In this document: piece by piece, positions 14,964 to 62,200 of the stretch | Numbering within the stretch: the first letter of the stretch is position 1 | Layout of the letters: the number at the start of each line of letters is the position of its first letter | From: Glycera tridactyla | Lineage: Eukaryota | Direction of reading: 5' to 3' | DNA length: 64,000 nucleotides | NCBI GenBank assembly: GCA_965644265.1 | Contig: CBFFRO010000022.1 | Location: 248,001-312,000 of the forward strand | Translations under genes and position numbers: made by a program | Notes under the pieces: model-generated | What the model saw: only the letters and a program-made list of their open reading frames with translations | Database searches by the model: none | What the model was told of the DNA's origin: nothing

Positions 14964-17900
14964 GTAGTGCCAAAACTCATGCCAAAACTCCCTCACAACC
15001 CTTATCACCAACAATGACCACTCCCCCCACCCCCTTTTCCTCCCTTCAATCGGACTATGTACTCTCGAATACCTTTCTGAAGGGTACACATCATGAATGT
15101 CCTTCTCTTACCACTCCAATTAATCACTCATGTATCAGCCAATCAAATAACTGATACAGTTTGTATCAGCCAATCAGGAGGTTGCATACATACACTAACC
15201 ACCATCCACCAATCATCTGATGTTACTTTAGTAGAGATTATATTATTTCCGAGAGCATTTTTATCTTTGTTTATGGTTTAGTTTAGTAATGTGGCATGGG
15301 GTGCAATGGTATTCTGCTTCTTATACATCACTCTTTGACAGTATCACAAAAAAAGCGAGAGCCTACGGTTATCGAATAAAATCACCAAATCCCATCGGCT
15401 GGCACTGCTGTTGAATCTTTTGAGGCTGATGGTTGAGGAAATTTCTATGACAGTATCATCATGTAGGTTTTGATGATTATATTTGGTAACCATTTGCTGT
15501 GAGGTTTCATACCGTCAGAGTTTGTACTCATGAGATGTTTGAATAGACTGTCCCATGAGTGCATATCTGATGTGTTTGGCTGTATCACATAGAGGATATG
15601 ATATCTGTAAGGTATCATACTTGATAGTTCATCTTGGGATTTCCTGAGGCCAGATGAGAGAGAAAATCATGCTTTATGATGCATATGACTGAATAAGGGC
15701 TTTGCTAGATCTAAGGAGAAATTTACTTCTCCATGTGTAGTCAAGACTTTGGGATTATCTAACCAATATTTCATGAGCTTTTTCATAGCATTTCACAGCA
15801 TATTTGTTGAAAATATAGCATTGTCAAAGGATAATGAAGGGATTTGAAATGCACAGAGTGTATGTCACTGTTTCTTTTGGCTCATCCAGTTATTTCTTGG
15901 CGGAAATTAAGATATGCTCCAACACAATCACATTTTACAGTGAAATCTTTCAGTTATCTAATGATCACTTTCACAGATTGTGGACATGAAAATATGTGAG
16001 AGTTGTGCTCATTCTCCAGGAGGCCTTTTTTTTTTAGGAACATAGAATTTTTTAAAATCTGATAGGAGAGTGCATGCTGTACTGCACTCAGCAAAGGATT
16101 TAGATGAAATATGGCTTTTTGAGAGAAGGGGGAACTAGCCAGTATGGTACAGTGATCCCACAGCTTTCATTCAGATGTGATTCTAACAGGCTTGATAGGG
16201 GGTACCATAAAGTTTTTGCCAATTAGCACGAATCCTATGGTCTGGTAGGAAATTCTGTGTAAAAGATGCACTGGTTGTGTGGGTGCCCTGTGTTATTTTG
16301 TGATTTATCCCAGAAGAATGACTGCTTGCAGTTCCAAAGGTCAGATTTCATTTCGTAGGTAATGACACTTTTCTGTGGATATTCTTTCATGATTCTATTA
16401 TTTTCATGTGCTATTATGTTTAGAGATTCCATATGTTTTAAATGTTTTGATCAGCCTCATTTGCCATGCATTGTTGAAGTCAGTGAGTGAAGAATGAAAT
16501 TTCATGTGCCTTACCCAACTGAATATGTTGATTAGATTTTTGTTTCACTATGTCCGGGCGTAATTATGCCACAGATGGTAACCGGATTAGGGGCATGGAT
16601 TATTATTTTCACATTTCATTATTCTCACGCATTCCATGGCTGGTTAGAATTTGGTTCAGAGATACAAAATTTAATCTGTGGCATTAAAGGTTTTTTTTCT
16701 CCTTCATGTGGGTTCTTCTCTAATACCATGAACATGATGAGTAGATATATTTTTTTTATGAGTGATCAAGATATCAAACTGTGGCAGTAATTTTTAATAA
16801 AATCTTGAAACGAAAATTCTCATCAATGTAGAACATCCAATCAGAGGACATTGCCAGAGAATTTTGTCCACTTGTCACCACCATGAAACTTTCATTTCCT
16901 AACAGGTGGAACAAAACATTTTTCAATCTTCTGACCACCCAAATTTATTGTAGAGCCTGTTGCAATTTAAGGGCAGTAATTGTGATTTTGTCAAATTGCT
17001 ATTTAGTACTTGGTGTAGGAAGATTGTAAGGTTCCATTTATCAGACTGGTCTATACAATTTTCTCATAACCAAGTAAGGTTTTTCTACTCAAATTGAGCA
17101 CATGAGATACTGTAATCATTCGGTCCTGTGTCAAGTATTCGGAACTGCAGCACAAACCTGATTCTTTGCTTTGTAGACCTGTGGCGTGTTCTGTGCTAGG
17201 TGGCAGCACAACTGATTTCTTTATATTATCAGTGTTGTTAACTTGTTTGTGATTGGTTGCACTTTCAGCCAATGAGATAGCTGCTGGGATATGAGTGCGA
17301 GCCTGCTCTATGTTGCCATGCTGACTGCTATTTGCTCTCTTTTTATCTCTGGCTCTCAATTCTATTTTATATTTTATCAATTTTTAGCTGTCACTGCTGC
17401 TGCTCTAGTACTTCTTTAGCTGATTCTGCTATCAAATTTGGATGATATTTATGAGCCTTCAATTCAGCTTGCCATCTTACTGCAGCTTCTCACTTTTACA
17501 CTTTTGCTTCTGCCACCTAAATTGTCCTTCCCAAATACCTGCTTATCCTGCTCCCAATTCCTTTACTTCCCTCCAAAGATTGAAGATCATAGAACTTGAT
17601 ATACCTGGAAATATGTTTCTTGTCCATATGGAGCCATCAACCAGTCTTGTGTTAGAAGTCAAGTGGTATCTTCCATACCCAATTTCTTTATATTAGTTGT
17701 TCATCGCATAGAATTACTTGTTAATGCTTTCCAACTGGCCAGTTCACAGGTAGCTGAATATGAATCTACATCCCATAATCCATGTCCACCCAGTTAATGA
17801 GATCTTTCTGTCCGTTGTCATGAATTCTGTTTTTAACCGGGGAAGTTGAAAATGATATGGATTTTTGATGAGGTGTAAAGGATGCCATCGGTGTATGCTA

Positions 17901-37759: not shown

Positions 37760-40700
37760 ATTGTGGTGATATCAATAGTAACATGAACAACAATATAAGC
37801 AGCAAATATAACATTGGCAATAATCATATTACAGTTGATAGTGTAACTAGAAATTGATTCCCAAGAAATGGCTTTTACTCAAATTGTGATAGTAGATAGG
37901 TTGTTTTGCTGTGTAGCATTTCCACTTGGTACTGCTACTGCATATTGCATTGAAGCACAGCTGTATAACAAAAAAGATACAACTGGTCAATCCATAACTT
38001 GGAATTCTCATTAAATAAGCATTTGGGTATATACTGGTGGCATGCATCAGGGTTGGCAGTCTTCACTATTTTGTTATATACTTCAGACTCACTATATGTA
38101 AGTCACATTTAGGTTGCAGTGATCTGATATTATATTGTAAGTCATGTCACAAAAATGGATGATCAATTTTAAATAATAGGACACAATTCATCACTCTTAA
38201 TAATGCTCGAAGTGAATATTGCAGCACGAACAATCTTATACAAATTAGTGCTTTCTCGTGATTCTTCTTGTTCATCTCAGGTATCAGATAGAGACAATTT
38301 TGCATAAATTTTGTGATAAGTATTTATGCAGATTTGGGTTGAGGGAATGGGAGGGAGGTGAATGAGTCTTTGAAAATGGTCAGAATGAGCAAGTGTTTCA
38401 CACACTTAGGATCACTAAGCAATCACATGCAGATGTCCAAAAGCCATGCATGAATTACCAAACACTTGTCAGATACACGTCAGCTTTCAGATCAGATCAA
38501 CGTGTCGCAGTTCAGCGTAGATTCGATATAGAGAGGCAGATCTCCCAGCTACTTGGTGTTATTTTCTGATGTCATTGCTATTTGATCTTGTGCTGTCTTC
38601 AGTGTTATCATTTCACCGAATTCTGTTAGGCGTCCAATGCTCAGATTCTTCATCAGAGTGTCACCTATCTGCAACTGCGATGTCATGCAGCTGTTAAGAA
38701 AAATTCATTGGAATTTTCCAGAATTGTTCAAAATGCATTGGTTTTTATGAATTGCACAGTCTATGTTTTCTATGTTCCAATTCATCTCAATGATGAAAGT
38801 AAAAAGTCAACTTAAGTAGACTGTCTCATAAAATTTCAACTGGTGCTCAACATATTGTTAGCAACTGCCATATTATTCTGCTTTGTGCTCTACTGAAAGC
38901 TCAGAATACAGAATAATGTTGTTAGTTTCCCCAAGACGCTGGATGCACAACATGTATGGCATTTGTGAGACTCATACGTTTCTCAAAACAGTGACTACCA
39001 TCTTTGTTGCCCGTTATATGCAACATCTGATGGTTGCATGCTCTATGCAATGTGGGTATTACAACCTCATCTTTCAGCAAATGAACATCAGACTAGAATT
39101 CAACAGATAGGTGTACATTATTGGTGAATTGGTGACAAGCGTGAGGTTGAGGTGCTCAAGATTACTTGAGTTAGCTAATTTATTTGCTTGTTTATCTTTC
39201 ATGAGCTGCATCCCGTCTGGTTCCATTCCAGTTTCAGTATCTGGCTTCACACATTGTCCTTATGCCACACTTATGCCTGTCCAGAAGGCTAAATTTAGCA
39301 GGCACAGGATGTTGGTTTTTGATATTGCTTGGCATGGTCATATGACTACGTCTCTGCCCGAACCTCAATTTATTTGCCTGCCTGCTGTGCAGAGTTGAAG
39401 CATGTATTACAAGGCCTATATCAAGTCAAAGACTGAAGTGTGGCATAACTACAAGATGTCCTATGCATGTGATATGGGTGAGAATGGATGGCACTTTTGG
39501 AGTATGCTATCCCATGGAATGTTGTAGTGGCAAAAGTCTGTCTTATGTGTTTTTCTCATTCATATCCTGTGCGTAGGGCATTATTGTCATGAACTCACCA
39601 GCGTATTGTCAATCATTTCTCACCACCACTGCTCTTCATGCTCCGCTTGGCTTCTGTATCGGCAGGAAGTAAAATTTGCAGCTCAGTGGTTTCAACATGG
39701 TGGCACACACTAGCTTTCTGATTTTTAGTTTTTCTTGACCCTCTCTCCTGCTCCCCCTCTTTTGCCATTGCAAAATCTCAACAGATGATACCCCAGCATG
39801 AACGTGATTTGCCACCACTCGGTGGTGATATCATCAGCTATGAACCCATCTTGTGGTGACCTGTCAAAGCTAGATGCCTCACTTTTATTCTTTTCGAATT
39901 CACCTGGAGGTCAAACACTAATTGGTATGGCTGGACTGCTCTAATCACCTGTGTGCTACTCCGTATTCTTGGTGTCCGTGTGTCTTTATTGAGCTGATGA
40001 TGGCTGAGGCTTGTTTTCTGTTCATATTCGTTGATAACTAATTCAATGTTAATGTTGAAACAGGCACACCGTCCTTACCCAATGCCGGGTGTACCACTCT
40101 ATGTGCCAGGGCCAGGTCAGTAAGCGTATTACCGTAGGAATGGCATTCTTGCAACGGCTTTTAATGTTGCTTTTACTCCGTAAGCAGTTGTGACTCGCTT
40201 GACATGATTATTGTGGCAAAACACTCGCTGCTGCAGGCATATCTTGTTAGTGCCACTTGCTTTTCACTCAATCATTCAGCGGTCCCGATTTGTATATCCG
40301 GTATGGGCTTTGGAACCTGATTGCTAAAAACTCTTGTTTGTGTCAGTGGGGGAGTTTAATTACAGGGCATGGAGAAGTCTCTGAATTGGCTTAGCATCCA
40401 AGATTGAAAATGCATTGACCATAATTGAGCTGTAGATAAGTTCTTTTTTCATCTTAGTCCCTTTTACACTAAACTTGTGTTGATTTCATTAAAATGCTTA
40501 ATTATCTATTTAACAATATATTTATCGACAAAAGTGTCATAAATATAAAATAAACCATGTGTCTTGATGTGGCATGCTGATTGTCCGTTGTATCCGGCAT
40601 ATTTACTATACAGCCCTGTCTGCTAGCCCCCCTCTTCCAGTATTAACCTATAACATGTTAATCTCCTCAGAAGCACATCAAAAAAGCACTTGTGGTGATA

Positions 40701-42599: not shown

Positions 42600-42759
42600 G
42601 GTATGTCAGTACCGGGTATGGTACCTATGGTGAAGCGTGCAGCGGTTGCCGATAACAAGAGTGGAATTCCTATGTATCAGCCCGGCGCTGGTGCCGCGGC
42701 CTACCAACAAGCAGCTCTTGCTGCTATGCATATGCAACAACCATTTGTGCCCGTAACCA
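42600..42759 (+). CDS. MBNL: Muscleblind-like exon-6-like segment (GMSVPGMVPMVKRAAVADNKSGIPMYQPG...QQPFVPVT), phase 0/1
   Basis: Acceptor gcattgcag| at 42599 and donor CCA|gtgagt at 42760. The KR..A...G.P.YQ....YQQ...QQPFVPV pattern is typical of Muscleblind C-terminal regions. Confidence 0.9.
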
Positions 42760-45964: not shown

Positions 45965-46962
45965 TATATGCTTTTGATTTGGACAGATATTATCGTAATT
46001 TATAGTTGACTAGATAAAATATTTGCTGTAGTTCGATAAATTGCAATAGTTGCTCACTTGCTGTGACCATGCCAGGCATCAAGATGTTCAATAATTGTAT
46101 GTTTTAAGTATCAGGTACTAAGATGATGATGAAAAGAATGTTGATGAAATGTGATAATTTGAAGATGACATGTGATGTTTTATACCACAAATATTGCATC
46201 ATCAGTGGGATGTCAATGTGAGGTCCTGCTTATCTTGCACATCCTGACTGCAATGGATGGCATCCAATATTTGTGGTATAAAAGTGAGAAATTTTTTCTG
46301 TGAAAGATTCAAATTAGACCACATTTGGGAGGGTAGGACGCTCCCTGCCTTGAGCTCCTCCCAGTGAGATTCTTCTGGTATCTTTCACATGCATGATTTC
46401 TTGCTATAATTTATAATAAATACATTGATGAAAATGACATGATGGTAATTTTTTGTCATGTCCAACTCATGCTGTGTTTTTTAATCATTGGTCTCTTGGA
46501 AGCACTAGGTCTCCAGGACGTACATCTATTTCAGCTGCTGGCAACTTTCATATTTCTGTCAAGTCGGCAGCTACTGAAATTTCACTCATTACTTCAGAGA
46601 TGTCAAGGTGATGTGTTTCATAATCTTGAAAATGAGCCATTTGTTTGATTTGAGGAGGAAAGATAATGCATACATGATGCTATCCATATTATGATCTTTG
46701 ATTTGCACAGTATGGGTTGAACTCATGAGATTGAATGTGAAATGAGGGGAATAAATCAGATTCAGATTCAGTTCTCTGTGGGTTTTGAAGATTCTTGTTA
46801 ATCTGGGAACTATTGTGAGCTTGAGTTGATATGCTTATTTTCTCTTTATCTGTGTAGAGTTGGATGACAATATTTTTGTTTTGATGGGCTTTATGCACTT
46901 GGTTTGGCTTGGGCTTTGGTTTCTGTAGAGCAGAAGGTGATGGTTGCAGCTTGATTGAATGA

Positions 46963-47130
46963 NNNNNNNNNNNNNNNNNNNNNNNNNNNNNNNNNNNNNN
47001 NNNNNNNNNNNNNNNNNNNNNNNNNNNNNNNNNNNNNNNNNNNNNNNNNNNNNNNNNNNNNNNNNNNNNNNNNNNNNNNNNNNNNNNNNNNNNNNNTGGG
47101 CGTATGGATGTGTATGTGTGTGGGTGGGGG

Positions 47131-47180
<50 letters not shown>

Positions 47181-47740
47181 TACATGCGTGCATGTGGCGG
47201 ACTTTATATAGGATTGATCCTATTTCCCATTTCCTGGGTGCATGTGCACTTGCAAGTGCATGCATGCATACCTACTCAACTCTGAATGTGTTATTTCAGC
47301 ACATTTATGCACACCGAATGGGAATTGNNNNNNNNNNNNNNNNNNNNNNNNNNNNNNNNNNNNNNNNNNNNNNNNNNNNNNNNNNNNNNNNNNNNNNNNN
47401 NNNNNNNNNNNNNNNNNNNNNNNNNNNNNNNNNNNNNNNNNNNNNNNNNNNNNNNNNNNNNNNNNNNNNNNNNNNNNNNNNCGGGTGTGTGTGTATGTGT
47501 TCACGGGTGTGTATGTGTTCGCGCAATTGACAAGGNNNNNNNNNNNNNNNNNNNNNNNNNNNNNNNNNNNNNNNNNNNNNNNNNNNNNNNNNNNNNNNNN
47601 NNNNNNNNNNNNNNNNNNNNNNNNNNNNNNNNNNNNNNNNNNNNNNNNNNNNNNNNNNNNNNNNNNNNNNNNNNNNNNNNNNNNNNNNNNNNNNNNNNNN
47701 NNNNNNNNNNNNNNNNNNNNNNNNNNNNNNNNNNNNNNNN
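46963..47740. other. Three assembly gaps (46963-47096, 47328-47481, 47536-47740)
   Basis: N characters. Confidence 1.
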
Positions 47741-47762
47741 AAAAGGTGCAAATATGTGCACT

Positions 47763-47800
<38 letters not shown>

Positions 47801-47830
47801 CGTGTGTGTGTATGCATGCTTGCGTGTATG
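47097..47830. repeat. (TG)n-rich low-complexity region broken by assembly gaps
   Basis: (TG)n runs at about 47133-47178 and 47766-47810 beside N blocks. Confidence 0.85.
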
Positions 47831-47881
47831 CGGCATGTATGTGTGTGTCACATCCAGTAGTCTCTTCATTATCACTCACAG

Positions 47882-48099
47882 CATTTGTTCTCTCTGACTT
47901 CTCTTTCATGCCCTGCCCCATCACTACTCCAACCACAACCTGTTGTTGCTTACCAAAAAACAAAAAACAAAAATCTGCTCACCACACACTGCATGCTGCG
48001 CTACCAACTCACACACGCTTTCCACCAATCGCTGATCTCCTCTCAACCTGCCTTCACCGAACCGACCAATCGCTGGCCGTGTCTCAACCATGCCATCAG
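47882..48099 (+). promoter_or_regulatory. 216-nt AG-exclusion zone with YGCY motifs upstream of the 98-nt exon
   Basis: No AG between 47882 and 48097; 11 YGCY motifs; branch-like CTGAC (47894) and CTGAT (48032) each followed by pyrimidines. Confidence 0.6.
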
Positions 48100-48197
48100 T
48101 GTCATTGCTACCGGGCACACAAGCAGCGCTAGCAACCGGAAGTATGGCGATGGTTACTAACGCCGCTAGCGTCAATTATTTTGACGAATCAAACCAG
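48100..48197 (+). CDS. MBNL: 98-nt exon (M)SLLPGTQAALATGSMAMVTNAASVNYFDESNQ, phase 1/0; needed to put the extra zinc-finger pair in frame
   Basis: First AG after a 216-nt AG-free stretch (catcag| at 48099); donor CAG|gttagc at 48198. Phase 1 matches the 42759 donor (a+tg=ATG) and phase 0 matches the 52495 acceptor. Confidence 0.78.
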
Positions 48198-51100
48198 GTT
48201 AGCTAAGATACCGCAAAGTCATGGCACGGTGCAGGCTTGCTGCCATTGGTGGTTGCTGCTTGCTGATATTATAAGCCGGATATTGTCCTAGCTGCACCCG
48301 CAGCATTTGGGGGTCCTCTATTGGGGCCCTCCATTGGCAGCTGGCTTTGAGTCCTCCCTCACCTTTGTCTAGCCCCTCCTCCTCCTCTCCCTCTCTCACC
48401 CCTCTCTCTGGCTCTATGGCACTTCCCTGTTCACTGATATAGAAATAGTTGCAGAATAGTCTTTAGAGGAGGCATACAATAGTTGTGCTTAGCCGAAAAT
48501 TCACTCTGTATCAATTTGGAGGTCGTAAGTACTTTTTTTGTTTCTCCCAAGTCAAATTGATCCTGCTGCTGAGTTTCATCTATTCTGACATCAAAATCGG
48601 CATAGATACGTTTGCCTTGGATGATGTACATTATCTTCAAACTACTGAGGATTTTCACCATTTAGAGCACAATCATTTCATATATGCCATCCATCAGGAT
48701 TTTGAAGACATGATTTCTCTTATAGGCATAAATTGCCACATTTCAAGCCTGATATTGCAAAAACTAGTATCAATGATTCTGAAAATTGGCATCATAACAA
48801 TCCTTGCTAATCAAGTTTTAGCATCCCTGCTACTTGCATTCACATACGTGCAAAACTTTGGGAGAAATAGTGCTCATCTCCTGATGATTTGGAGAAAGAT
48901 GACGATCGCAATCGTCTATGACTCTTCCAGAGTAATCCAGTTATCACTAATGGATTGTTGATGATAGATGTGTGGGACAATGTAGTGAGATGTTCTCTAT
49001 GACTCCAATGAGACATTAATCAACCAACAAAACAAGACAGACCCCTTAATCATTGTATACAATTAGTTCATATGAGTTTTGGTATTCCATTTGATTCATG
49101 TGGGTGAAAGCTGTAGAAACTCCAAGGTATATGATGATTTATTCTGACTGGTGATATCCTGAACCCAGGGCATTTAATACAATGATGCATAGGTAAATTT
49201 GTAGCGTCCTGTTGCACAATCCCACTCCTGTGTTTCATCAAGAATCAGAACCAGGCCATTTTCATTTGGTGTATTTGTTTTATTTTATCTCTTTCCATCA
49301 TGCGAATGATTCCAGTTGCCAAACCATTCATAGCCCAAACAATCGAAACTGCAATGTCAGTGCAAATATGTCGATTGAGCAAGCATTTTCTTTCTTGCTT
49401 ATTTGTTTTGTTCTGTTTATTCTGATGATGCCCTGGCCAATTGGTGTGTACATGCTTTGTTGTCTCTTCATGCTTATTCCATATCATGCCTCTCAAATAA
49501 TTCAAGCCAGGGTTGAACAGATGTAAAAAGCAATCATTTACTCAAACCTTATCTTGATCTCACCCCGCTGTGGAAGAGTGTTACCAGGGGTTGAGATATC
49601 TCTCATTGTGGAATATCTGGCACACATACAGGCATACATACATACTCAGGCATTGATACCAGTCTAAAAGAGACAGATGAACAATATCAAACATTTATGT
49701 GAAAATATTGTACATTTATCAAATGATGCCTTCAAGATGCAACATTCCATGCAACAAGACTGGAATGAAAACAGGTTTGGCGCTGATTTCTCCGTCCAGT
49801 TCATAGTTTGTGCACCAGGGAATCTTCAAATTCATTACGAATTTGGAGTAATGACTTCTTTCCTTGGCTGAGATTTTGACAGCTCACACATCACAATAAT
49901 CAAGGAAATTTAGATTTTTTAATGTGCTCATTGGTATTACTCCATCAATATAAAGAGGTCAATTTTGCCACTCTTTTCATGAAAATGATAAGCTGTGTAC
50001 ATGTGCAATCCATGGGATGATCACTTGTAGCAGTGGAAGAAGGGATTTGCGATGTAGGGACCTGGATTTGCTGTAGATGTTGGTGAAACAGAATCCCATA
50101 TTCAACCAACTCTTTGATCATTGCAAATACATTGACAATGACAATGACAATATCTTTTATTTTATAATAATACATTGTACTGCCATCAGTACTCAGTTCA
50201 TTACTGATTTTGGAAATCGAGGGTGGCATCTCTGAGTTTATTTTGTATTTTATTGGTATTATTTGAGTTCATTGATCATCAGCTTATGTTGGTAACCTCC
50301 TGCCGCCCCAAACTCTTCATCACCAGTCTCTTCTCATTGAATGTCTCACACATCTCTCAAACTTCAAATCCATAAAGTGTGAACCATGGTTTGATCTTGT
50401 GGGAGACCACAAGTATTCAATATCAGTTCGATGTGACTTTATTTATTCTGAAGCCTCCATGTGACTGTCCCATAACAGGTATGATTGTGTTACCTATCAA
50501 TAGGTTTGAGTTATCTTTGTATTTCAATAGAAATAGTATTTGTATGAGCGATGTAAAGATCGAGAACAGATTATGAAGATCATTGCCCAATAAGATTCAG
50601 GAATAATTTGCCTCCTCATAGACTATTCTCCACCACAATCACATTGCCTCCTGTGCCATAATTGCTCCCTATAGTTCAGCATTCCTCCTATGCAGTTAAC
50701 TACCACAGTTAAAAATCCATTATCAACGAAGAATTTACTGAAATGCTTCATCATAGATTCAAATACACCTTTCAAAGATAGATTTTCATGCTGTTTTTGG
50801 AAAGATAGCAGTTTTTTCTCATCAGATATAGAAGTTGACTGTTTCAACAGCTTATATATAAATGAACATCAGAGCTTTCCCACTTTGGTTGGTCCATTGT
50901 TGATGATTGGGACTGTGTGTATTTTCTGCATGGAGTGTTATTGGTAGTGCTCTCTACTGGCACACGCCGCCGCCGCCATCACTGCAGCAGCAAGCCTCCA
51001 CTGGTGTCCCTGTCGCCATGCCGATGGGAATTTCTTCTCTTCTCTTTTTGCCGTGACCTCATTCTCTGCAGGCTTTGCAGTGGTGTATTTCTTGCAGGGA

Positions 51101-52494
51101 ATGAAGTGACTCCACTACTGAGCACCTCACAACCCTTGGTTGGAGTCCTCTCTGTGTGTGATCCACCCAATGGTGTTGGGATGCTTGCTTCATTTTCAGG
51201 TTCCTGTTTGAACAATGCAAATCTTTTAGTTCAATATCATCCCTTGGTCATCGAAACACACCCATGTATGTACAATCTGATAAAGATAACATCTATAAAT
51301 TTGGGCATTTCTTATTGGCGCCAATAATAGAATTATTTGTTTGGAGTAAACACCAAACAATTGTCCCAAAGTGTCCATTCACATTGAAATTGAGTGTAGT
51401 TTGGAGATTCTTCTCAGTTAGCATTACATAGCAGTGCCTTCTATGTGAAGTGTGCAGATCATGTATCAGATTTGTGTGCTGGTGCTATCAAGAAGCACTT
51501 CCCAGTCTTTTCAAAAGTGTAAAATTAATACCCATGAGCTGGTAACTAGAACGGCTCAGTCAGAATTGCTTTTGGTGAATTACTAGTTGATATTGGGGAA
51601 AATGGAATTTTGCGTATGCATAGATCTGATTTTATCATAATTCACATAAGTTGTGGAGGGCATCATCCTTTTATGAGGGTATTTTAGGTGCTCTGCCTGA
51701 GAGGCTGTGAAACTTTGCTGGAAGTATTTTGAATTCTGGATGAATTTGTAAAAGATTTGCATTGGAGCACGGGTTCCTGAAGTATGTTCTGTGAAATAAC
51801 TACTTTGCCTGATGAAAACTCTGCTTCATAGTTAACATGATTGTCCATAGATTTAAAAACAGACTGAACTCACAAGTTTCCATTTCTCTGCTAGAATCAT
51901 TTCACAGTTTTCTTCTTAGTGAAATAAAATCTGAATTTTGTGCCATACCAAGATGATGGACTTGAGAGACAAATGATCTCCATCTGAATTCATCTTCCTG
52001 GCAACATTTCTGAAATCATACTTTTCAGCATATTATAACCAAAAAGAATATGATTTTTCAGCATGTACATGTAGAATCCAAAACATGAGGTCAAAGGATC
52101 TCATAATGATAATTGTTTCCAGTTTCATAGAACACACTGGTTTACATTCAGCAATATTGCATTCATGTAAGCCATACAGGAAAACTGATACTGAACATCA
52201 TTCAAGAAGTTCTTTTAGTCGGGGAAATTGAAAATTTGATCATGAGTAGTTGGTTGATCTTTCCTAGATGTGCTTTGAAGTATTTCCTAGCAATAACAAA
52301 GTAATTTCTATATACAACTGGAGCTTTTATGCATTAAACTTTCAACACTTGTTCAACTCTGCTCAGATCTGCTTTGCTAGCTGTGTTTTCAATGAATGAG
52401 TGACTAGAGGGTATGTCTTGCTGATGATGTTTCCTTGTGATCGCTCTCCATCTACCGATTCTCCAAACTGATGAAATGTGAATTGTTCTTACAG

Positions 52495-52579
52495 TTGCTG
52501 GACACCCTCCCAGTGTGCAGAGATTTTAAGTCTGGACAGTGCAAGCGGCCACAATGCAAATATGTTCACCTTGTAGAAG
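52495..52579 (+). CDS. MBNL: Exon encoding an additional CCCH finger (LLDTLPVCRDFKSGQCKRPQCKYVHLVE), phase 0/1; absent from the ORF track
   Basis: Acceptor ttgttcttacag| at 52494 and strong donor AAG|gtgagt at 52580; CX7CX4CX3H preceded by the MBNL-type (L)xVC motif. Confidence 0.9.
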
Positions 52580-52734
52580 GTGAGTAAACATGAGATACTT
52601 GTGTATAATCGTGCATACATGCATACAGTAGATATGATTTGTTGTTATTACATCATCTCAATACTCATTGATGTTTTTTTCTCACTCATCAAATCATATT
52701 CATCGATTGTGATTCAGAATTATATCCACATGCA

Positions 52735-52739
52735 CACCC

Positions 52740-52803
<64 letters not shown>
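52735..52803. repeat. (CA)n microsatellite
   Basis: Directly visible. Confidence 0.95.
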
Positions 52804-52804
<1 letters not shown>

Positions 52805-52989
52805 TTTTTTTAGTGATAGAAATCATGTCAGAGACATATTTCCAGATTGTACTGGCAACAGGTCCATGAAATGTGTTCCAAATGCCCAAATTATTTTTTG
52901 GCTTGTATGGGATTTGAACCATCAACCTTCCAGTTTGGCACCCTCGCCAGCAACAAACTGCCAACGCTCTTGTCCTCTGCCCCACGGCA

Positions 52990-54018: not shown

Positions 54019-54137
54019 ATTATGTAGAAGTTTTGGACGGCAAAGTAACAGTATGCCGAGATGCGGCAAAAGGGAAATGCTCTCGTGCCATGTGCAAGTA
54101 TTATCATATACCAATACTGCCGCATCTACTTATCTAG
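54019..54137 (+). CDS. MBNL: Terminal coding exon with the second finger of the extra pair ((D)YVEVLDGKVTVCRDAAKGKCSRAMCKYYHIPILPHLLI*)
   Basis: Acceptor ttttatctcatttcag| at 54018; g+at=GAT joins the phase-1 donor at 52579. CX7CX4CX3H preceded by VTVC as in MBNL even-numbered fingers; TAG at 54135-54137. Confidence 0.9.
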
Positions 54138-59200: not shown

Positions 59201-62200
59201 GAGCTGATTCTACCGGTGTCATGTTCTGATGAATGATGATTTACATACTCCAGTCAGGATAGATCATTCAAGTTTGTTCTTTAAAATTTCCATCACATTC
59301 TATGAGATGATTTCTGATTTTTTGAGAACATACAGGGAAATATGCAAATGTAAAGCTTCAAATATCGTATGCCAGGAAGTAGACAGAATATTGTGTTCAA
59401 TTCGATAAACCAACAGGTTGTTGCAGGTGAAATAATGAGATCAGTTGCATCATTGTTGCATTATAAATCCGGACATGACATGAGGCAGTGTGACACATAT
59501 TCAGATATTGGATACATGCACATCATTCCACTAAATGTGATCATATAACTACTGAACTACACCATCAGTTAGTTGGGTGAAAGAAATAGCACCTTCATCT
59601 CTTGAATATCACATCTTTGTCACTGTTTATACACCATAAAGTGACACCTGCAGTTTGAGTTTTTGAATTGGCAACAGTCATCACCAGAATGACCTGCATA
59701 TATTTTTAATTAATTTTCATTCTGTTTTGAAATGATGTAAATAATCAGAAAAAGAGGCATATTCCTGCATTCAACAGAACAAATTCAGCCTTCAAGGTGC
59801 CTATGGTGGGTATATATGCAGTGCTCAGAATTCTTCATATCATCACACATTTTTGTTGCTATGGTGATCATAAGTGTGATTGGAGAATGAATAATTCTAA
59901 TCACTGTAGAAGGGATGTAAGTTAGTGTTATCACATGTATTGTTCTTTATATTTTAATCCATATATGTTAGTTGATATTTTTATGTGGATAAACGAAATG
60001 AGTTGATTGTATGTTGGAAACGAAAAAGAAAACAAAGTTGGAGTATTCACATAATTTTTGTGATATTTTATTATTACTGGTTGTGTCACACAATAACGAT
60101 AATATATAGATAGTGTATTGAAGGTTCTTTCTCTAGGTTAGAATTTTGTGAGCAGCTCTTGGTTTCTCAGTTTCTGTTGTCTCCTAAGGTTTATGTTGGG
60201 GATGCGTTTATGTCTCCCGCACATTTTATATAAATGTTGTAAGTTGAACTTACAGTTAGTTACCCTGCTCAACATATACCACAGATCTGTCAAAAGTGTG
60301 TTAATATGTACGTCACAAGCATCCACGGTATGCATAAATCCACAGCATAACAACCAGTTAAGCAGTAGACTTCACAGATTTTGCCCAATATTTTAGCACT
60401 AGTCAGAACACCGACAAGTGGCTTCAGAAAAAGCTTGCTTGTTTTTATCCTGATGAAGTTCAACTATTTTATCAATAAGTGCCATTTCTGTAAGTCTAAT
60501 GATATTTATCACATGCAGTGAATAATTTGTTGGCTCAAAACCAAGTACAACCATCTGTGAAATATTTTCATATAGGAAATACAAAGCAGTGTCTTTCTCA
60601 CTCTGTTGCCATATTTGAACTGGACTACTTTCCAAATTAGCATGCATGTATATAGAGCTCTTTTCATGAAAGTCTCCATGGAATGCATAATAGCTGAATA
60701 TGGATGGATGTGATGCCATTTTTGCACTCCCCTGATCGATCTAAAACCACACGTCATATACAATAAATCTTTAAAGTCTACCGTGATGTCATGATGACAT
60801 GGTTTTTAGAAGAGATGTCGATTTTTCCATTTGTATTTTTACCAGTATATCATTTATTCAAATGTTAGTGCCATATTTGCATGTGTGTATCATATACTGG
60901 GCTATATTTATATTCATATGTCATTGTGATTGAGATATTTTCACTGTAGTTATCCATATACATATAACTATGTACTCTTTTGTCATTGTTATCTGAGGTT
61001 TACAAACAGTTAGGAGGTTGTTCCATCAAAATCATTTTGGAGGCCATTTTTTCTTACTTTGGAATTTATCACTTCCAATCGTGTAGTATCCTTATATTCA
61101 ATTCGGGCATCATCTCCATAAGTCAAATGGTGGTTTTAGGCTAATGTATTTCAAGAAGTAAAGAAATACTCATTGTTCAGTTCACAACACCCACTGATTT
61201 GATTCTACTAGATTGTGCATATTTTATATTTTTATATATGATTTGCAGCAAAATGAAAACATCAGAGAACATATAAAATATGTGTTTCATTTTCATGAGC
61301 CTTGCTGAGCATCTGTGTAGGATGAAAATGAATGCCTATCATGCCTCAATTTTCCAATCTCATTTGGAATTTTTAAGTGCCGGCCTTTTCTCAGTATCAG
61401 TATGTGAGAAAAATTTGTTTTGGAAGAAAATTTGAGATTAGGATTTTTCTGCATCCATTCCATGGATAAGTAGGATATTCTTTTCGTCAATTGTCGGTGT
61501 ATTACTGCATATGCAGGGCTCATATACCACATATCACTTCTTACTTCTTACTTTTGAACCTATTGTCATATTATGCACAAAGTTGAAAAACGATTGCAGT
61601 GCCATACGAGAACCTGTGCTTCATCATTGGAGAAGATGGATTATTTTCTGTCAGATGGACTTGAGACTTTCTATGAAATTGGTCTTCCATGTAACCAAGA
61701 TTTTATCTGTCTTTGGAGCCATCAATAGGCAGTGTACAAACCAAAATAACGATGTTGGTCAGGTTGTTTGAACATGTTTGAAGAATTCCAGCAGCATTCT
61801 GGTGATGTTAATGGTGGTTAGGTGATATATGTTGAGCAGAGTACAGGGAAAGGGAGAATTGTGTGTGCGTGTGTGTGCGTGTAAATATATATATATATTG
61901 TCTTGCAGCTCTTTTCATATGTGTTATGTCACTACTGTAAACTAACCAACAATTTCATTTTATGGCTGGGTGAAAAAAAAAGATATACTCCATACTCTAG
62001 TTGGTCATTGCCAGTGTATGCTCCACTTGTGGCTGATTTGTGGGATGAAGGTTGCTTAATGAGACCTGCCAGAAAAAGTTTGTATTCTTATTATATTGTG
62101 TTTTTTTTTCTTATATTGGTACCTGTTTCATCTGGAAACTACACATAAAAATGCTCTTCAAGGCATCAGCAGACCCTCATATCATTGTGCTCTTCATCAA

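What the first reader, a model, noticed from the sequence alone, without database searches (positions are those of the whole stretch)
47882..48270. 98-nt frame-switch exon bracketed by YGCY on both sides, with an upstream alternative acceptor
Its length is not a multiple of 3, so inclusion decides which frame of exon 52495 is read. It has a 216-nt AG-free zone with 11 YGCY upstream and 5 YGCY within about 48235-48266 downstream. Established: upstream MBNL sites tend to repress and downstream sites to activate. The acceptor at 47881 (cactcacag|) is also phase-compatible but stops at 48130-48132, 65 nt before the donor, which predicts an NMD substrate.
Basis: partly seen in the sequence, partly recalled or inferred. 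Interest (0 to 1): 0.7.

Follow-up and report, generated by a model that had tools for sequence, protein, structure and literature searches.

The report
Conserved frame-switch exon in muscleblind
This 98-base piece of a worm's muscleblind gene is a real optional exon, the counterpart of the 95-base frame-shifting exon of vertebrate MBNL genes; including it decides whether the protein ends in an extra pair of RNA-binding zinc fingers or in an 11-residue tail.

Summary
The exon is 48100-48197 (98 nt, 2 mod 3). It has a 216-nt AG-free zone upstream, 11 YGCY upstream and 5 downstream, and an upstream AG at 47881 whose frame stops at 48130-48132.

The window is a muscleblind (Mbl/MBNL) locus. Inclusion puts exon 52495 in its zinc-finger frame (fingers 5 and 6). 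Skipping gives the tail IAGHPPSVQRF*.

Orthologous exons in a bivalve, a limpet, a butterfly and a hemichordate are 107, 101, 53 and 68 nt, all 2 mod 3. The peptide aligns with the vertebrate 95-bp exon; in lamprey that exon is still followed by fingers 5 and 6.

All five species share a 134-219-nt AG-free zone with the pyrimidine tract at its far end, which suggests a distant branch point. Four of five have UGCAUG 64-110 nt upstream.

YGCY is in the top 1% for the locus, but only P=0.05 against local composition. The downstream cluster is not conserved.

Four RNA-like runs show only skipping junctions (42759>52495, 40115>52495). No inclusion was seen, and nothing covers the proposed upstream acceptor.

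Mbl autoregulation is plausible by homology with the vertebrate exon but untested. The NMD acceptor idea is unsupported. Earlier scan notes on this same window cover the neighbouring two-frame exon.

The parts
40064..40115 (+). 52-nt upstream alternative exon; its donor is joined directly to 52495 in RNA-like contigs
   Evidence: Loose end before 52492/52495 in all four runs, mapped at 40087-40112; sequence
42600..42759 (+). e6-type exon (ends ..QQPFVPVT); leaves 1 nt (A), so the next exon starts in phase 1
   Evidence: Sequence. The donor at 42759 is confirmed by contigs joining ..CCCGTAACCA to 52495. The peptide is conserved in Lineus, Eurosta and others
47880..47881 (+). AG proposed as an alternative acceptor; here read as the 5' boundary of the AG-free zone
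   Evidence: zero depth over 47741-48072 in four runs
47882..48097 (+). 216-nt AG exclusion zone holding 11 YGCY
   Evidence: equivalent zones of 157, 219, 134 and 176 nt in four other species
47888..47907 (+). Candidate distant branch point (CTGAC, A at 47897) with adjoining pyrimidine runs
   Evidence: The most pyrimidine-rich 50-nt window of the zone lies at its 5' end in all five species
47990..47995 (+). TGCATG (Rbfox-type motif), 110 nt upstream of the exon
   Evidence: The same hexamer lies at -71, -64 and -77 in Pinctada, Patella and Saccoglossus. P about 3e-4 for 4 of 5 within 150 nt
48032..48044 (+). Second branch-point candidate (CTGAT, A at 48035) plus a 9-nt pyrimidine run
48100..48197 (+). 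98-nt frame-switch exon, coding frame from 48102 (32 codons, ends ..NAASVNYFDESNQ)
   Evidence: orthologous peptides and exons; alignments A1 and A4
48198..48203 (+). Donor GTTAGC (T at +3, C at +6: weak)
   Evidence: the orthologues have GTA at +1 to +3
48238..48264 (+). Downstream cluster of 5 YGCY
   Evidence: not above local composition; not conserved
48352..48401 (+). CU-rich tract, 90% pyrimidine over 50 nt (PTB-type), worm only
   Evidence: top 0.03% of windows in the locus
52495..52579 (+). 85-nt two-frame exon: zinc finger 5 after inclusion, tail ..AGHPPSVQRF* after skipping
   Evidence: deep contigs and both flanking junctions
54019..54137 (+). Exon for zinc finger 6 with stop codon
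   Evidence: junction 52579>54019 in all four runs; 663 relatives found

Best explanation
The stretch 48100-48197 is a genuine, optionally used coding exon of a muscleblind gene. It is orthologous to the 95-bp frame-shifting exon of vertebrate MBNL1/2/3.

Shown:
- The exon is 98 nt and follows an exon that leaves one base. Including it puts the next exon (52495-52579) into the frame that encodes a third pair of CCCH zinc fingers (fingers 5 and 6, continued at 54019).
- Skipping it reads the same exon one base out of register, giving an 11-residue tail and a stop.
- In the samples available the exon is skipped.

Inferred:
- The exon is held off by default and released in particular cells.
- Its acceptor has almost no pyrimidine tract of its own. 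It probably depends on a branch point and pyrimidine tract about 65 to 200 nt upstream.
- The AG-free stretch in between would then be a landing platform for repressors: Mbl itself on YGCY, an Rbfox protein on UGCAUG at -110, and PTB-type proteins on CU tracts.
- If Mbl is one of them, this is negative feedback on its own isoform mix, as in vertebrates.
For: Frame logic comes straight from the sequence.

RNA-like contigs confirm donor 42759, acceptor 52495, donor 52579 and acceptor 54019, and they show skipping.

Conservation of the peptide:
- The peptide just before finger 5 (..NAxSVxY.D..xQ | LLDTLPVC) is conserved in molluscs, insects, a barnacle, chelicerates, basal nematodes, a cestode, hemichordates and amphioxus.
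- One fly has both annotated forms. Eurosta X27 carries the exon plus fingers, and X24/X25 end in ..PVS|FTGHPPGVPRFQ*.

Conservation of the exon and its intron setting:
- Genomic exons in Pinctada, Patella, Papilio and Saccoglossus are 107, 101, 53 and 68 nt, all 2 mod 3.
- All five species have a 134-219-nt AG-free zone. Only 0.03-0.5% of AG gaps per locus are that long. The strongest pyrimidine tract sits at its far end.
- TGCATG lies at -64 to -110 in four of five species.
- YGCY in the last 100 nt numbers 3-5 against a background of 0.7-1.75; the combined P is 0.001 against locus background.

Link to vertebrates:
- Lamprey MBNL1 has the vertebrate-type exon peptide (VPMIPGP..SLPF..ANQ) followed directly by fingers 5 and 6. 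This ties the exon to the gnathostome 95-bp exon.
- In the literature, the 95-bp exon shifts the frame, is repressed by MBNL1, and iCLIP shows binding upstream of and inside it (PMC9943662).
- Long AG-free zones mark distant branch points and alternative exons (PMC1431707).
- Tpm1 exon 3 is repressed by MBNL1 and PTB through UGC clusters and pyrimidine tracts on both sides (PMC3643581).
Against: No contig in four RNA-like runs joins 42759>48100 or 48197>52495. The only cover of the exon is depth-2 unspliced pieces, no deeper than the intronic background. Inclusion in this species is therefore inferred from conservation, not seen.

Contigs drop rare forms, and the tissues sampled are unknown.

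Against local dinucleotide composition, YGCY is only marginally enriched upstream (P=0.05 in the worm; combined 0.055 over four species) and not enriched downstream.

The downstream cluster and the CU tract are specific to the worm.

No conserved RNA structure was found (z=-0.07).

The intron flanks do not align between species beyond short motifs.

The finger frame could also be reached by splicing an upstream phase-0 exon straight to 52495, as in tick models P0010 and P0019.
Confidence: 0.72

Rival explanations
1. The switch is real, but Rbfox and PTB-type proteins run it in a tissue-specific way. Mbl autoregulation plays no part, and the YGCY count is a by-product of a C-rich, AG-free intron segment.
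For: UGCAUG upstream is the best conserved motif, present in 4 of 5 species (P about 3e-4). YGCY is barely above local composition. Pyrimidine tracts stand at the zone's 5' end in all species, and there is a 90%-pyrimidine tract downstream in the worm. FOX-1 co-regulates another mbl-1 exon in C. elegans through an upstream GCAUG (PMC10773944).
Against: The vertebrate orthologous exon is repressed by MBNL1, with iCLIP binding upstream and inside. YGCY in the last 100 nt is above locus background in all five species (combined P=0.001). There are four YGCY inside the worm exon. The two modes of control are not exclusive.
Confidence: 0.3
2. The exon is a relic in this worm. It is conserved in sequence by descent but no longer spliced in, so fingers 5 and 6 are either unused or reached by another splice.
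For: No inclusion junction was found in four RNA-like runs, although exon 52495 has depth 30-200. The donor is weaker than in the other species (GTT at +1 to +3).
Against: The open frame, both splice sites, the 2-mod-3 length and the conserved C-terminal motif are all intact. Finger 5 is 27/28 identical to a tick's, which needs translation in that frame. The 216-nt AG-free zone is maintained. Logan contigs drop rare variants.
Confidence: 0.1
3. One reading: the AG at 47881 is an alternative acceptor, making a 316-nt exon with a premature stop at 48130-48132. That would be a poison isoform removed by NMD.
For: It is preceded by a fair pyrimidine tract, and the stop lies 65 nt before the donor. 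In Pinctada and Patella the AG at the zone's 5' edge also follows a good pyrimidine tract, and the extension carries stops.
Against: Depth is zero over 47741-48072 in four runs, while the neighbouring intron shows background cover. The AG lies 16 nt upstream of the best branch-point candidate, so it is more simply the edge of the exclusion zone (model in PMC1431707). The extension lengths (218, 159, 221, 136 nt) and their frames are not conserved, and in Papilio the extension stays open. NMD products would be rare without an NMD block, so absence is weak evidence.
Confidence: 0.1

Closest known systems
Vertebrate MBNL 95-bp exon (Mbnl2 exon 9, called e8 in the common MBNL1 numbering; PMC9943662, PMC13044900)
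   Same: It has the same position after the ..YQQAL..QQ..F.P exon and the same length class (95 and 98 nt, both 2 mod 3). The peptide is homologous, ending ..SV.(Y/F)....NQ (A1, A4). Inclusion shifts the frame and changes the C-terminus. In mouse it is an alternative cassette repressed by MBNL1, which binds upstream and inside.
   Different: In jawed vertebrates the shift only exchanges short tails (in MBNL2, with or without a PEST degron). Here and in most invertebrates, and in lamprey, it switches a third pair of zinc fingers on or off. Regulation by Mbl has not been tested in any invertebrate for this exon.
Rat Tpm1 exon 3 (MBNL1 plus PTB repression; PMC3643581)
   Same: It has a distant branch point with an adjoining pyrimidine tract. 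A cluster of UGC/YGCY motifs lies between that tract and the exon. A second UGC cluster and a pyrimidine tract lie downstream. The exon is skipped when the repressors are present.
   Different: It is an unrelated gene and a mutually exclusive exon, not a frame switch. In the worm the branch point and protein binding are inferred from sequence only, and the downstream half of the layout is not conserved in other species.
Exons with long AG exclusion zones and distant branch points (Gooding et al. 2006, PMC1431707)
   Same: The AG-free zone is well over 100 nt, the branch-point-like motif and pyrimidine tract lie at its 5' end, the exon is alternative, and regulatory motifs lie in between.
   Different: That class was defined in human genes. 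Here the zone is conserved at one orthologous exon in five animals from four phyla.
C. elegans mbl-1 exon 7 and vertebrate MBNL1 exon 5 autoregulation (PMC10773944)
   Same: They are optional exons of muscleblind genes, repressed by the gene's own product and co-regulated by FOX-1/Rbfox through an upstream GCAUG.
   Different: Those exons are in frame and carry a nuclear localisation motif. They are a different exon of the gene; its counterpart in this window lies near 34.7 kb.

Membership tests
MBNL 95-bp-type frame-shifting cassette exon | Lies in a muscleblind gene directly after the e6-type exon (..YQQA..QQ..F.P.) | tested here: met
   CCCH finger exons at 23.4, 52.5 and 54.0 kb and the e6-type exon 42600-42759; the same order in four other loci
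MBNL 95-bp-type frame-shifting cassette exon | Length not divisible by 3 (2 mod 3), so the downstream frame changes | tested here: met
   98 nt in the worm; 107, 101, 53 and 68 nt in the orthologues; 95 bp in mouse
MBNL 95-bp-type frame-shifting cassette exon | Encoded peptide homologous to that of the vertebrate exon | tested here: met
   Alignments A1 and A4: 21-36% identity over about 32 residues in A4 (28-30% in A1), shared .P(M/L).. ..SV.(Y/F).. ..NQ. Lamprey P0417 links the vertebrate-type peptide to fingers 5/6. The peptides are short, so the statistics are weak; position and phase carry the argument
MBNL 95-bp-type frame-shifting cassette exon | Both the included and the skipped form exist as RNA | tested here: inconclusive
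   Skipping is seen (42759>52495 in X1, X3, X4). Inclusion is not seen in four runs of contigs. Both forms are annotated in Eurosta
MBNL 95-bp-type frame-shifting cassette exon | Inclusion repressed by MBNL/Mbl bound upstream of and inside the exon | not testable with these tools
   Motifs only: 11 YGCY upstream and 4 in the exon; top 1% of the locus but P=0.05 against local composition
Distant-branch-point (long AG exclusion zone) exon | AG-free zone of 100 nt or more upstream of the acceptor | tested here: met
   216 nt, the longest gap in the window; 134-219 nt in four other species
Distant-branch-point (long AG exclusion zone) exon | Branch-point sequence and pyrimidine tract towards the 5' end of the zone, used in splicing | tested here: inconclusive
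   CTGAC plus pyrimidine runs at -212 to -193, but also CTGAT plus a run at -65. The pyrimidine maximum lies at the 5' end in all species. Use of either needs lariat mapping
Rbfox-regulated exon | (U)GCAUG within a few hundred nt of the exon, conserved in orthologues | tested here: met
   TGCATG at -110, -71, -64 and -77 in four of five species; chance about 3e-4. Binding and effect were not tested
Poison (NMD) exon variant by alternative 3' splice site | The upstream acceptor is used in RNA | tested here: not met
   No contig covers 47741-48072 in four runs. This is weak evidence, because NMD targets are rare and contigs drop rare forms

The most novel reading that the evidence does not exclude
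The frame-shifting 95-nt exon of vertebrate MBNL genes would be the remnant of an ancient bilaterian switch. Its original job was to add or remove a third pair of RNA-binding zinc fingers. It would have been controlled through a distant branch point with an Rbfox site, and probably Mbl's own sites, in the AG-free spacer. Jawed vertebrates lost the fingers but kept the switch. The switch and its intron architecture would be over 500 million years old, and Mbl would tune its own RNA-binding valency by feedback.
Probability: 0.45. Interest if true: 0.65.

Novelty: new member of a known kind. Interest (0 to 1): 0.5.

Why it matters
MBNL proteins are central to myotonic dystrophy, and their self-regulated exons are being explored for therapy.

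The results here show three things:
- The 95-nt frame-shift exon has an orthologue across bilaterians.
- Outside jawed vertebrates it toggles a whole extra RNA-binding module.
- Its unusual intron layout is conserved: a long AG-free spacer, a distant pyrimidine tract and an upstream UGCAUG.

This gives an evolutionary rationale for the exon. It also yields a short list of cis-elements that can be tested directly in tractable invertebrates. I found no paper describing a six-finger muscleblind or this switch in invertebrates, although the isoforms are present in automatic annotations.

Tried and rejected
Reads:
I used 47741-52700 instead, so the 42759>48100 junction could be seen only as a loose end, and none appeared.

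Structure and alignment:
- Pairing between the exon and the downstream YGCY cluster was tested by folding 48095-48290. The fold is no better than shuffles (z=-0.07), so I rejected it.
- Nucleotide alignment of the upstream introns of four species shows no conserved block beyond short motifs.

YGCY tests:
- The downstream YGCY cluster as a conserved activator is rejected. It numbers 0, 1 and 0 in Pinctada, Patella and Saccoglossus, and composition explains it in Papilio.

Look-ups that failed or found nothing:
- Exact-protein look-ups failed for Lineus, Glandiceps, Biomphalaria, Amphibalanus and Nymphon, because only the longest isoform of a gene is on record.
- No annelid six-finger protein was among the listed hits, so the nearest relatives of this worm were not compared.
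- There is nothing of note on the minus strand.
- A literature search for six-finger muscleblind found nothing relevant.

Left out by rule:
Exons were searched by reference only.
Full report
**What is there.** The window carries a muscleblind (Mbl/MBNL) gene on the + strand.
- A scan for C-x7-C-x4-6-C-x3-H found a tandem finger exon at about 23.4 kb and single fingers at 52516 and 54054.
- Exon 42600-42759 encodes the conserved ..YQQAALAAM..QQPFVPVT segment and leaves one base.
- The candidate exon 48100-48197 is 98 nt, with acceptor ccatcag|T and donor CAG|GTTAGC. It is open only in the frame that this leftover base dictates.
- With the exon included, exon 52495-52579 is read as LLDTLPVCRDF.. 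(finger 5) and continues into 54019-54137 (finger 6, then stop).
- With the exon skipped, the same exon reads IAGHPPSVQRF and stops.

**Check of the observation.** All counts are right: 216 AG-free bases, 11 YGCY upstream, 5 at 48238-48261, and TAG at 48130-48132 in the frame that starts at 47882.
- The AG-free gap is the longest of 3,260 gaps in the window. Other acceptors of this gene have 31-83 nt.
- Eleven YGCY in 218 nt is a top-1% value for the locus.
- Dinucleotide-preserving shuffles of the same stretch give 7.7 on average (P=0.05). The downstream five are not above local expectation (P=0.29).

**RNA evidence.** One search found four small runs of one study, kept as contigs and labelled RNA by guess. 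Laid on 47741-52700, they behave as RNA.
- Exon 52495-52579 has depth 30-200, while introns have about 2.
- Loose ends before 52495 read ..CCCGTAACCA, the end of exon 42759, in three runs. In all four runs they also read the end of a 52-nt exon at 40064-40115. The loose end behind 52579 is the start of exon 54019.
- Both upstream junctions give the tail frame.
- No contig joins the 98-nt exon to anything. It is covered only by unspliced pieces of depth about 2 (48113-48279, 48160-48310), like the rest of the intron. Nothing covers 47741-48072.
- Skipping is therefore shown. Inclusion is not seen in these samples, and the proposed upstream acceptor has no support. Contigs show presence, not absence.

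**Is the exon real?** I searched the finger-6 exon peptide (by reference) against 1.84 billion representative proteins. This gave 663 hits, many with six matched fingers.
- The sources name them muscleblind proteins of corals, molluscs, insects, a barnacle, ticks, nematodes, a cestode, echinoderms, hemichordates, tunicates and others.
- In these proteins the residues just before finger 5 match the worm exon. The worm has ..TNAASVNYFDESNQ|LLDTLPVC. The others:
  - Pinctada ..TNAHSINYFDGNQQ|LLDT
  - scorpion ..CNAASVTYCDEKGQ|LLDT
  - Manduca ..ANAPYVVYTDERGQ|LLDT
  - Trichuris ..SSSVEYFDESGK|LLDT
  - Glandiceps ..AANVPYYNAQNQ|LVET

- The fly Eurosta has both annotated forms. Isoform X27 has the exon and the fingers. 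X24 and X25 end ..QQPFVPVS|FTGHPPGVPRFQ.
- Lineus and Patella isoforms end in the same tail.

**Genomic comparison.** I fetched four loci and located the orthologous exon in each.

| Species | Locus | Exon | Length |
|---|---|---|---|
| Pinctada | L001 | 38271-38377 | 107 nt |
| Patella | L002 | 60568-60668 | 101 nt |
| Papilio | L003 | 46349-46401 | 53 nt |
| Saccoglossus | L004 | 15746-15813 | 68 nt |

- All four, like the worm's 98 nt, are 2 mod 3. All lie between the e6-type exon and a two-frame finger-5 exon.
- Each is preceded by an AG-free zone of 157, 219, 134 and 176 nt. Gaps that long make up 0.03-0.5% of AG gaps in the respective locus.
- In every species the acceptor itself has a poor pyrimidine tract. 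The most pyrimidine-rich 50 nt lie at the far (5') end of the zone, with branch-point-like YTRAY motifs there.
- This is the layout described for exons with distant branch points, which are mostly alternative and carry regulatory elements in the spacer (PMC1431707).

**Motifs in the spacer.**
- TGCATG lies at -110 (worm), -71, -64 and -77. Papilio has none. The chance of four of five loci having one within 150 nt is about 3e-4.
- YGCY in the last 100 nt numbers 5, 3, 3, 4 and 5, against locus means of 0.7-1.75. The combined P is 0.001 against locus background, but only 0.055 against local dinucleotide composition over four species.
- Downstream YGCY is 5 in the worm and 9 in Papilio (8 in the shuffle test's window; explained by a 72% G+C flank there). 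It is 0-1 in the other three.
- The worm alone has a 90%-pyrimidine tract at 48352-48401.
- In the worm the order is: pyrimidine tract, YGCY cluster, exon, YGCY cluster, pyrimidine tract. This resembles Tpm1 exon 3, which MBNL1 and PTB repress together through exactly such elements (PMC3643581).

**Link to vertebrates.**
- Word searches from a hemichordate and an amphioxus protein reached vertebrate MBNLs.
- Their 95-bp-exon peptide (VPMMHGATP..TSVPFA..ANQ in Callorhinchus, Pleurodeles and a seal) aligns with the invertebrate peptides (A1).
- A third search found lamprey MBNL1 isoforms in which the vertebrate-type peptide (VPMIPGP..SLPFVTSSSANQ) is followed directly by fingers 5 and 6. This settles the orthology by position.
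- The mouse exon is 95 bp, shifts the frame to another C-terminus, is repressed by MBNL1, and binds MBNL1 upstream and inside in iCLIP (PMC9943662; review PMC13044900).

**How it most likely works.**
- Shown: the frame logic, the skipping, and the conservation of the exon, its length class and the AG-free zone.
- Inferred: the exon is off by default and depends on a distant branch point. Repressors bound in the spacer decide its use. Rbfox is likely from the conserved UGCAUG. Mbl is plausible by homology and by motif excess against the locus. PTB-type proteins are possible in the worm.
- My estimates:

| Claim | Probability |
|---|---|
| Real alternative exon orthologous to the 95-bp exon | 0.85 |
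| Distant-branch-point control | 0.6 |
| Mbl autoregulation | 0.4-0.5 |
| Rbfox input | 0.5 |
| NMD acceptor at 47881 | 0.1 |

**The upstream acceptor.**
- The AG at 47880-47881 lies 16 nt upstream of the best branch-point candidate (A at 47897). It is more simply the edge of the exclusion zone.
- In Pinctada and Patella the corresponding AG also follows a good pyrimidine tract. However, the extensions (218, 159, 221 and 136 nt) have no common frame behaviour.

**Limits.**
- The tissue of the four runs is unknown and the contigs are not quantitative.
- No annelid relative was compared.
- Branch points and protein binding are sequence inferences.

**Earlier notes of this scan on this window.**
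- s1-312381 describes the two-frame exon at 52495. I re-derived its claim of a tail shared with molluscs and insects.
- s1-312414 is the six-finger note. Searches confirm six-finger proteins.

Noticed in passing
window 40064-40115 and 42600-42610: A 52-nt exon is spliced directly to 52495 in all four runs, skipping the e6-type exon as well. If both exons are used together, the frame fits only with a second acceptor 10 nt inside the e6-type exon (..gtcag|TACC at 42609/42610). That would be an alternative acceptor pair.
   Followed up: partly
window 52527-52579: In the dominant (skipped) mRNAs the tail's stop codon TAA (52527-52529) lies 50 nt upstream of the 52579|54019 junction. The finger 5/6 exons then serve as a spliced 3' UTR, right at the 50-55-nt rule for NMD.
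   Followed up: no
P0417, P0407 (Petromyzon), P0412 (Lampetra): Lamprey MBNL isoforms keep zinc fingers 5 and 6 after the 95-bp-type exon. The jawed-vertebrate proteins seen here end in ..IPIISxxHLTSHKYVTQM instead. The shared K-Y-V with finger 5 (..CKYVHL) may or may not be a remnant.
   Followed up: partly
window 48024-48048 and 48065-48089: There is a 25-nt direct repeat (80% identity, 41 nt apart) inside the AG-free zone. Each copy starts ACCAATCGCTG and carries one YGCY. The first copy holds the CTGAT branch-point candidate.
   Followed up: no
window 48154-48160; L001 about 38334-38340: TACTAAC, the perfect branch-point consensus, lies inside the exon in both the worm and Pinctada (codons ..T ACT AAC). 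The 15 bases TCAATTATTTTGACG are identical in the two species, which is more than the protein needs.
   Followed up: no
P0089 (Patella vulgata isoform X2): This isoform has a 32-residue insert between the e6-type exon and the tail, read in the tail frame. It is a further in-frame alternative exon, not the frame-switch exon.
   Followed up: no
P0006, P0013, P0015; P0006 named: Six-CCCH proteins with the same finger-pair layout were found. P0006 is from the green alga Closterium; P0013 and P0015 were not identified. They are either very old relatives or convergent.
   Followed up: no
window 47765-47850 and 52735-52805: Long (TG)n and (CA)n microsatellites lie in the introns on either side. Three N runs (46963-47740) lie just upstream of the finding, so the intron further upstream could not be read.
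   Followed up: no
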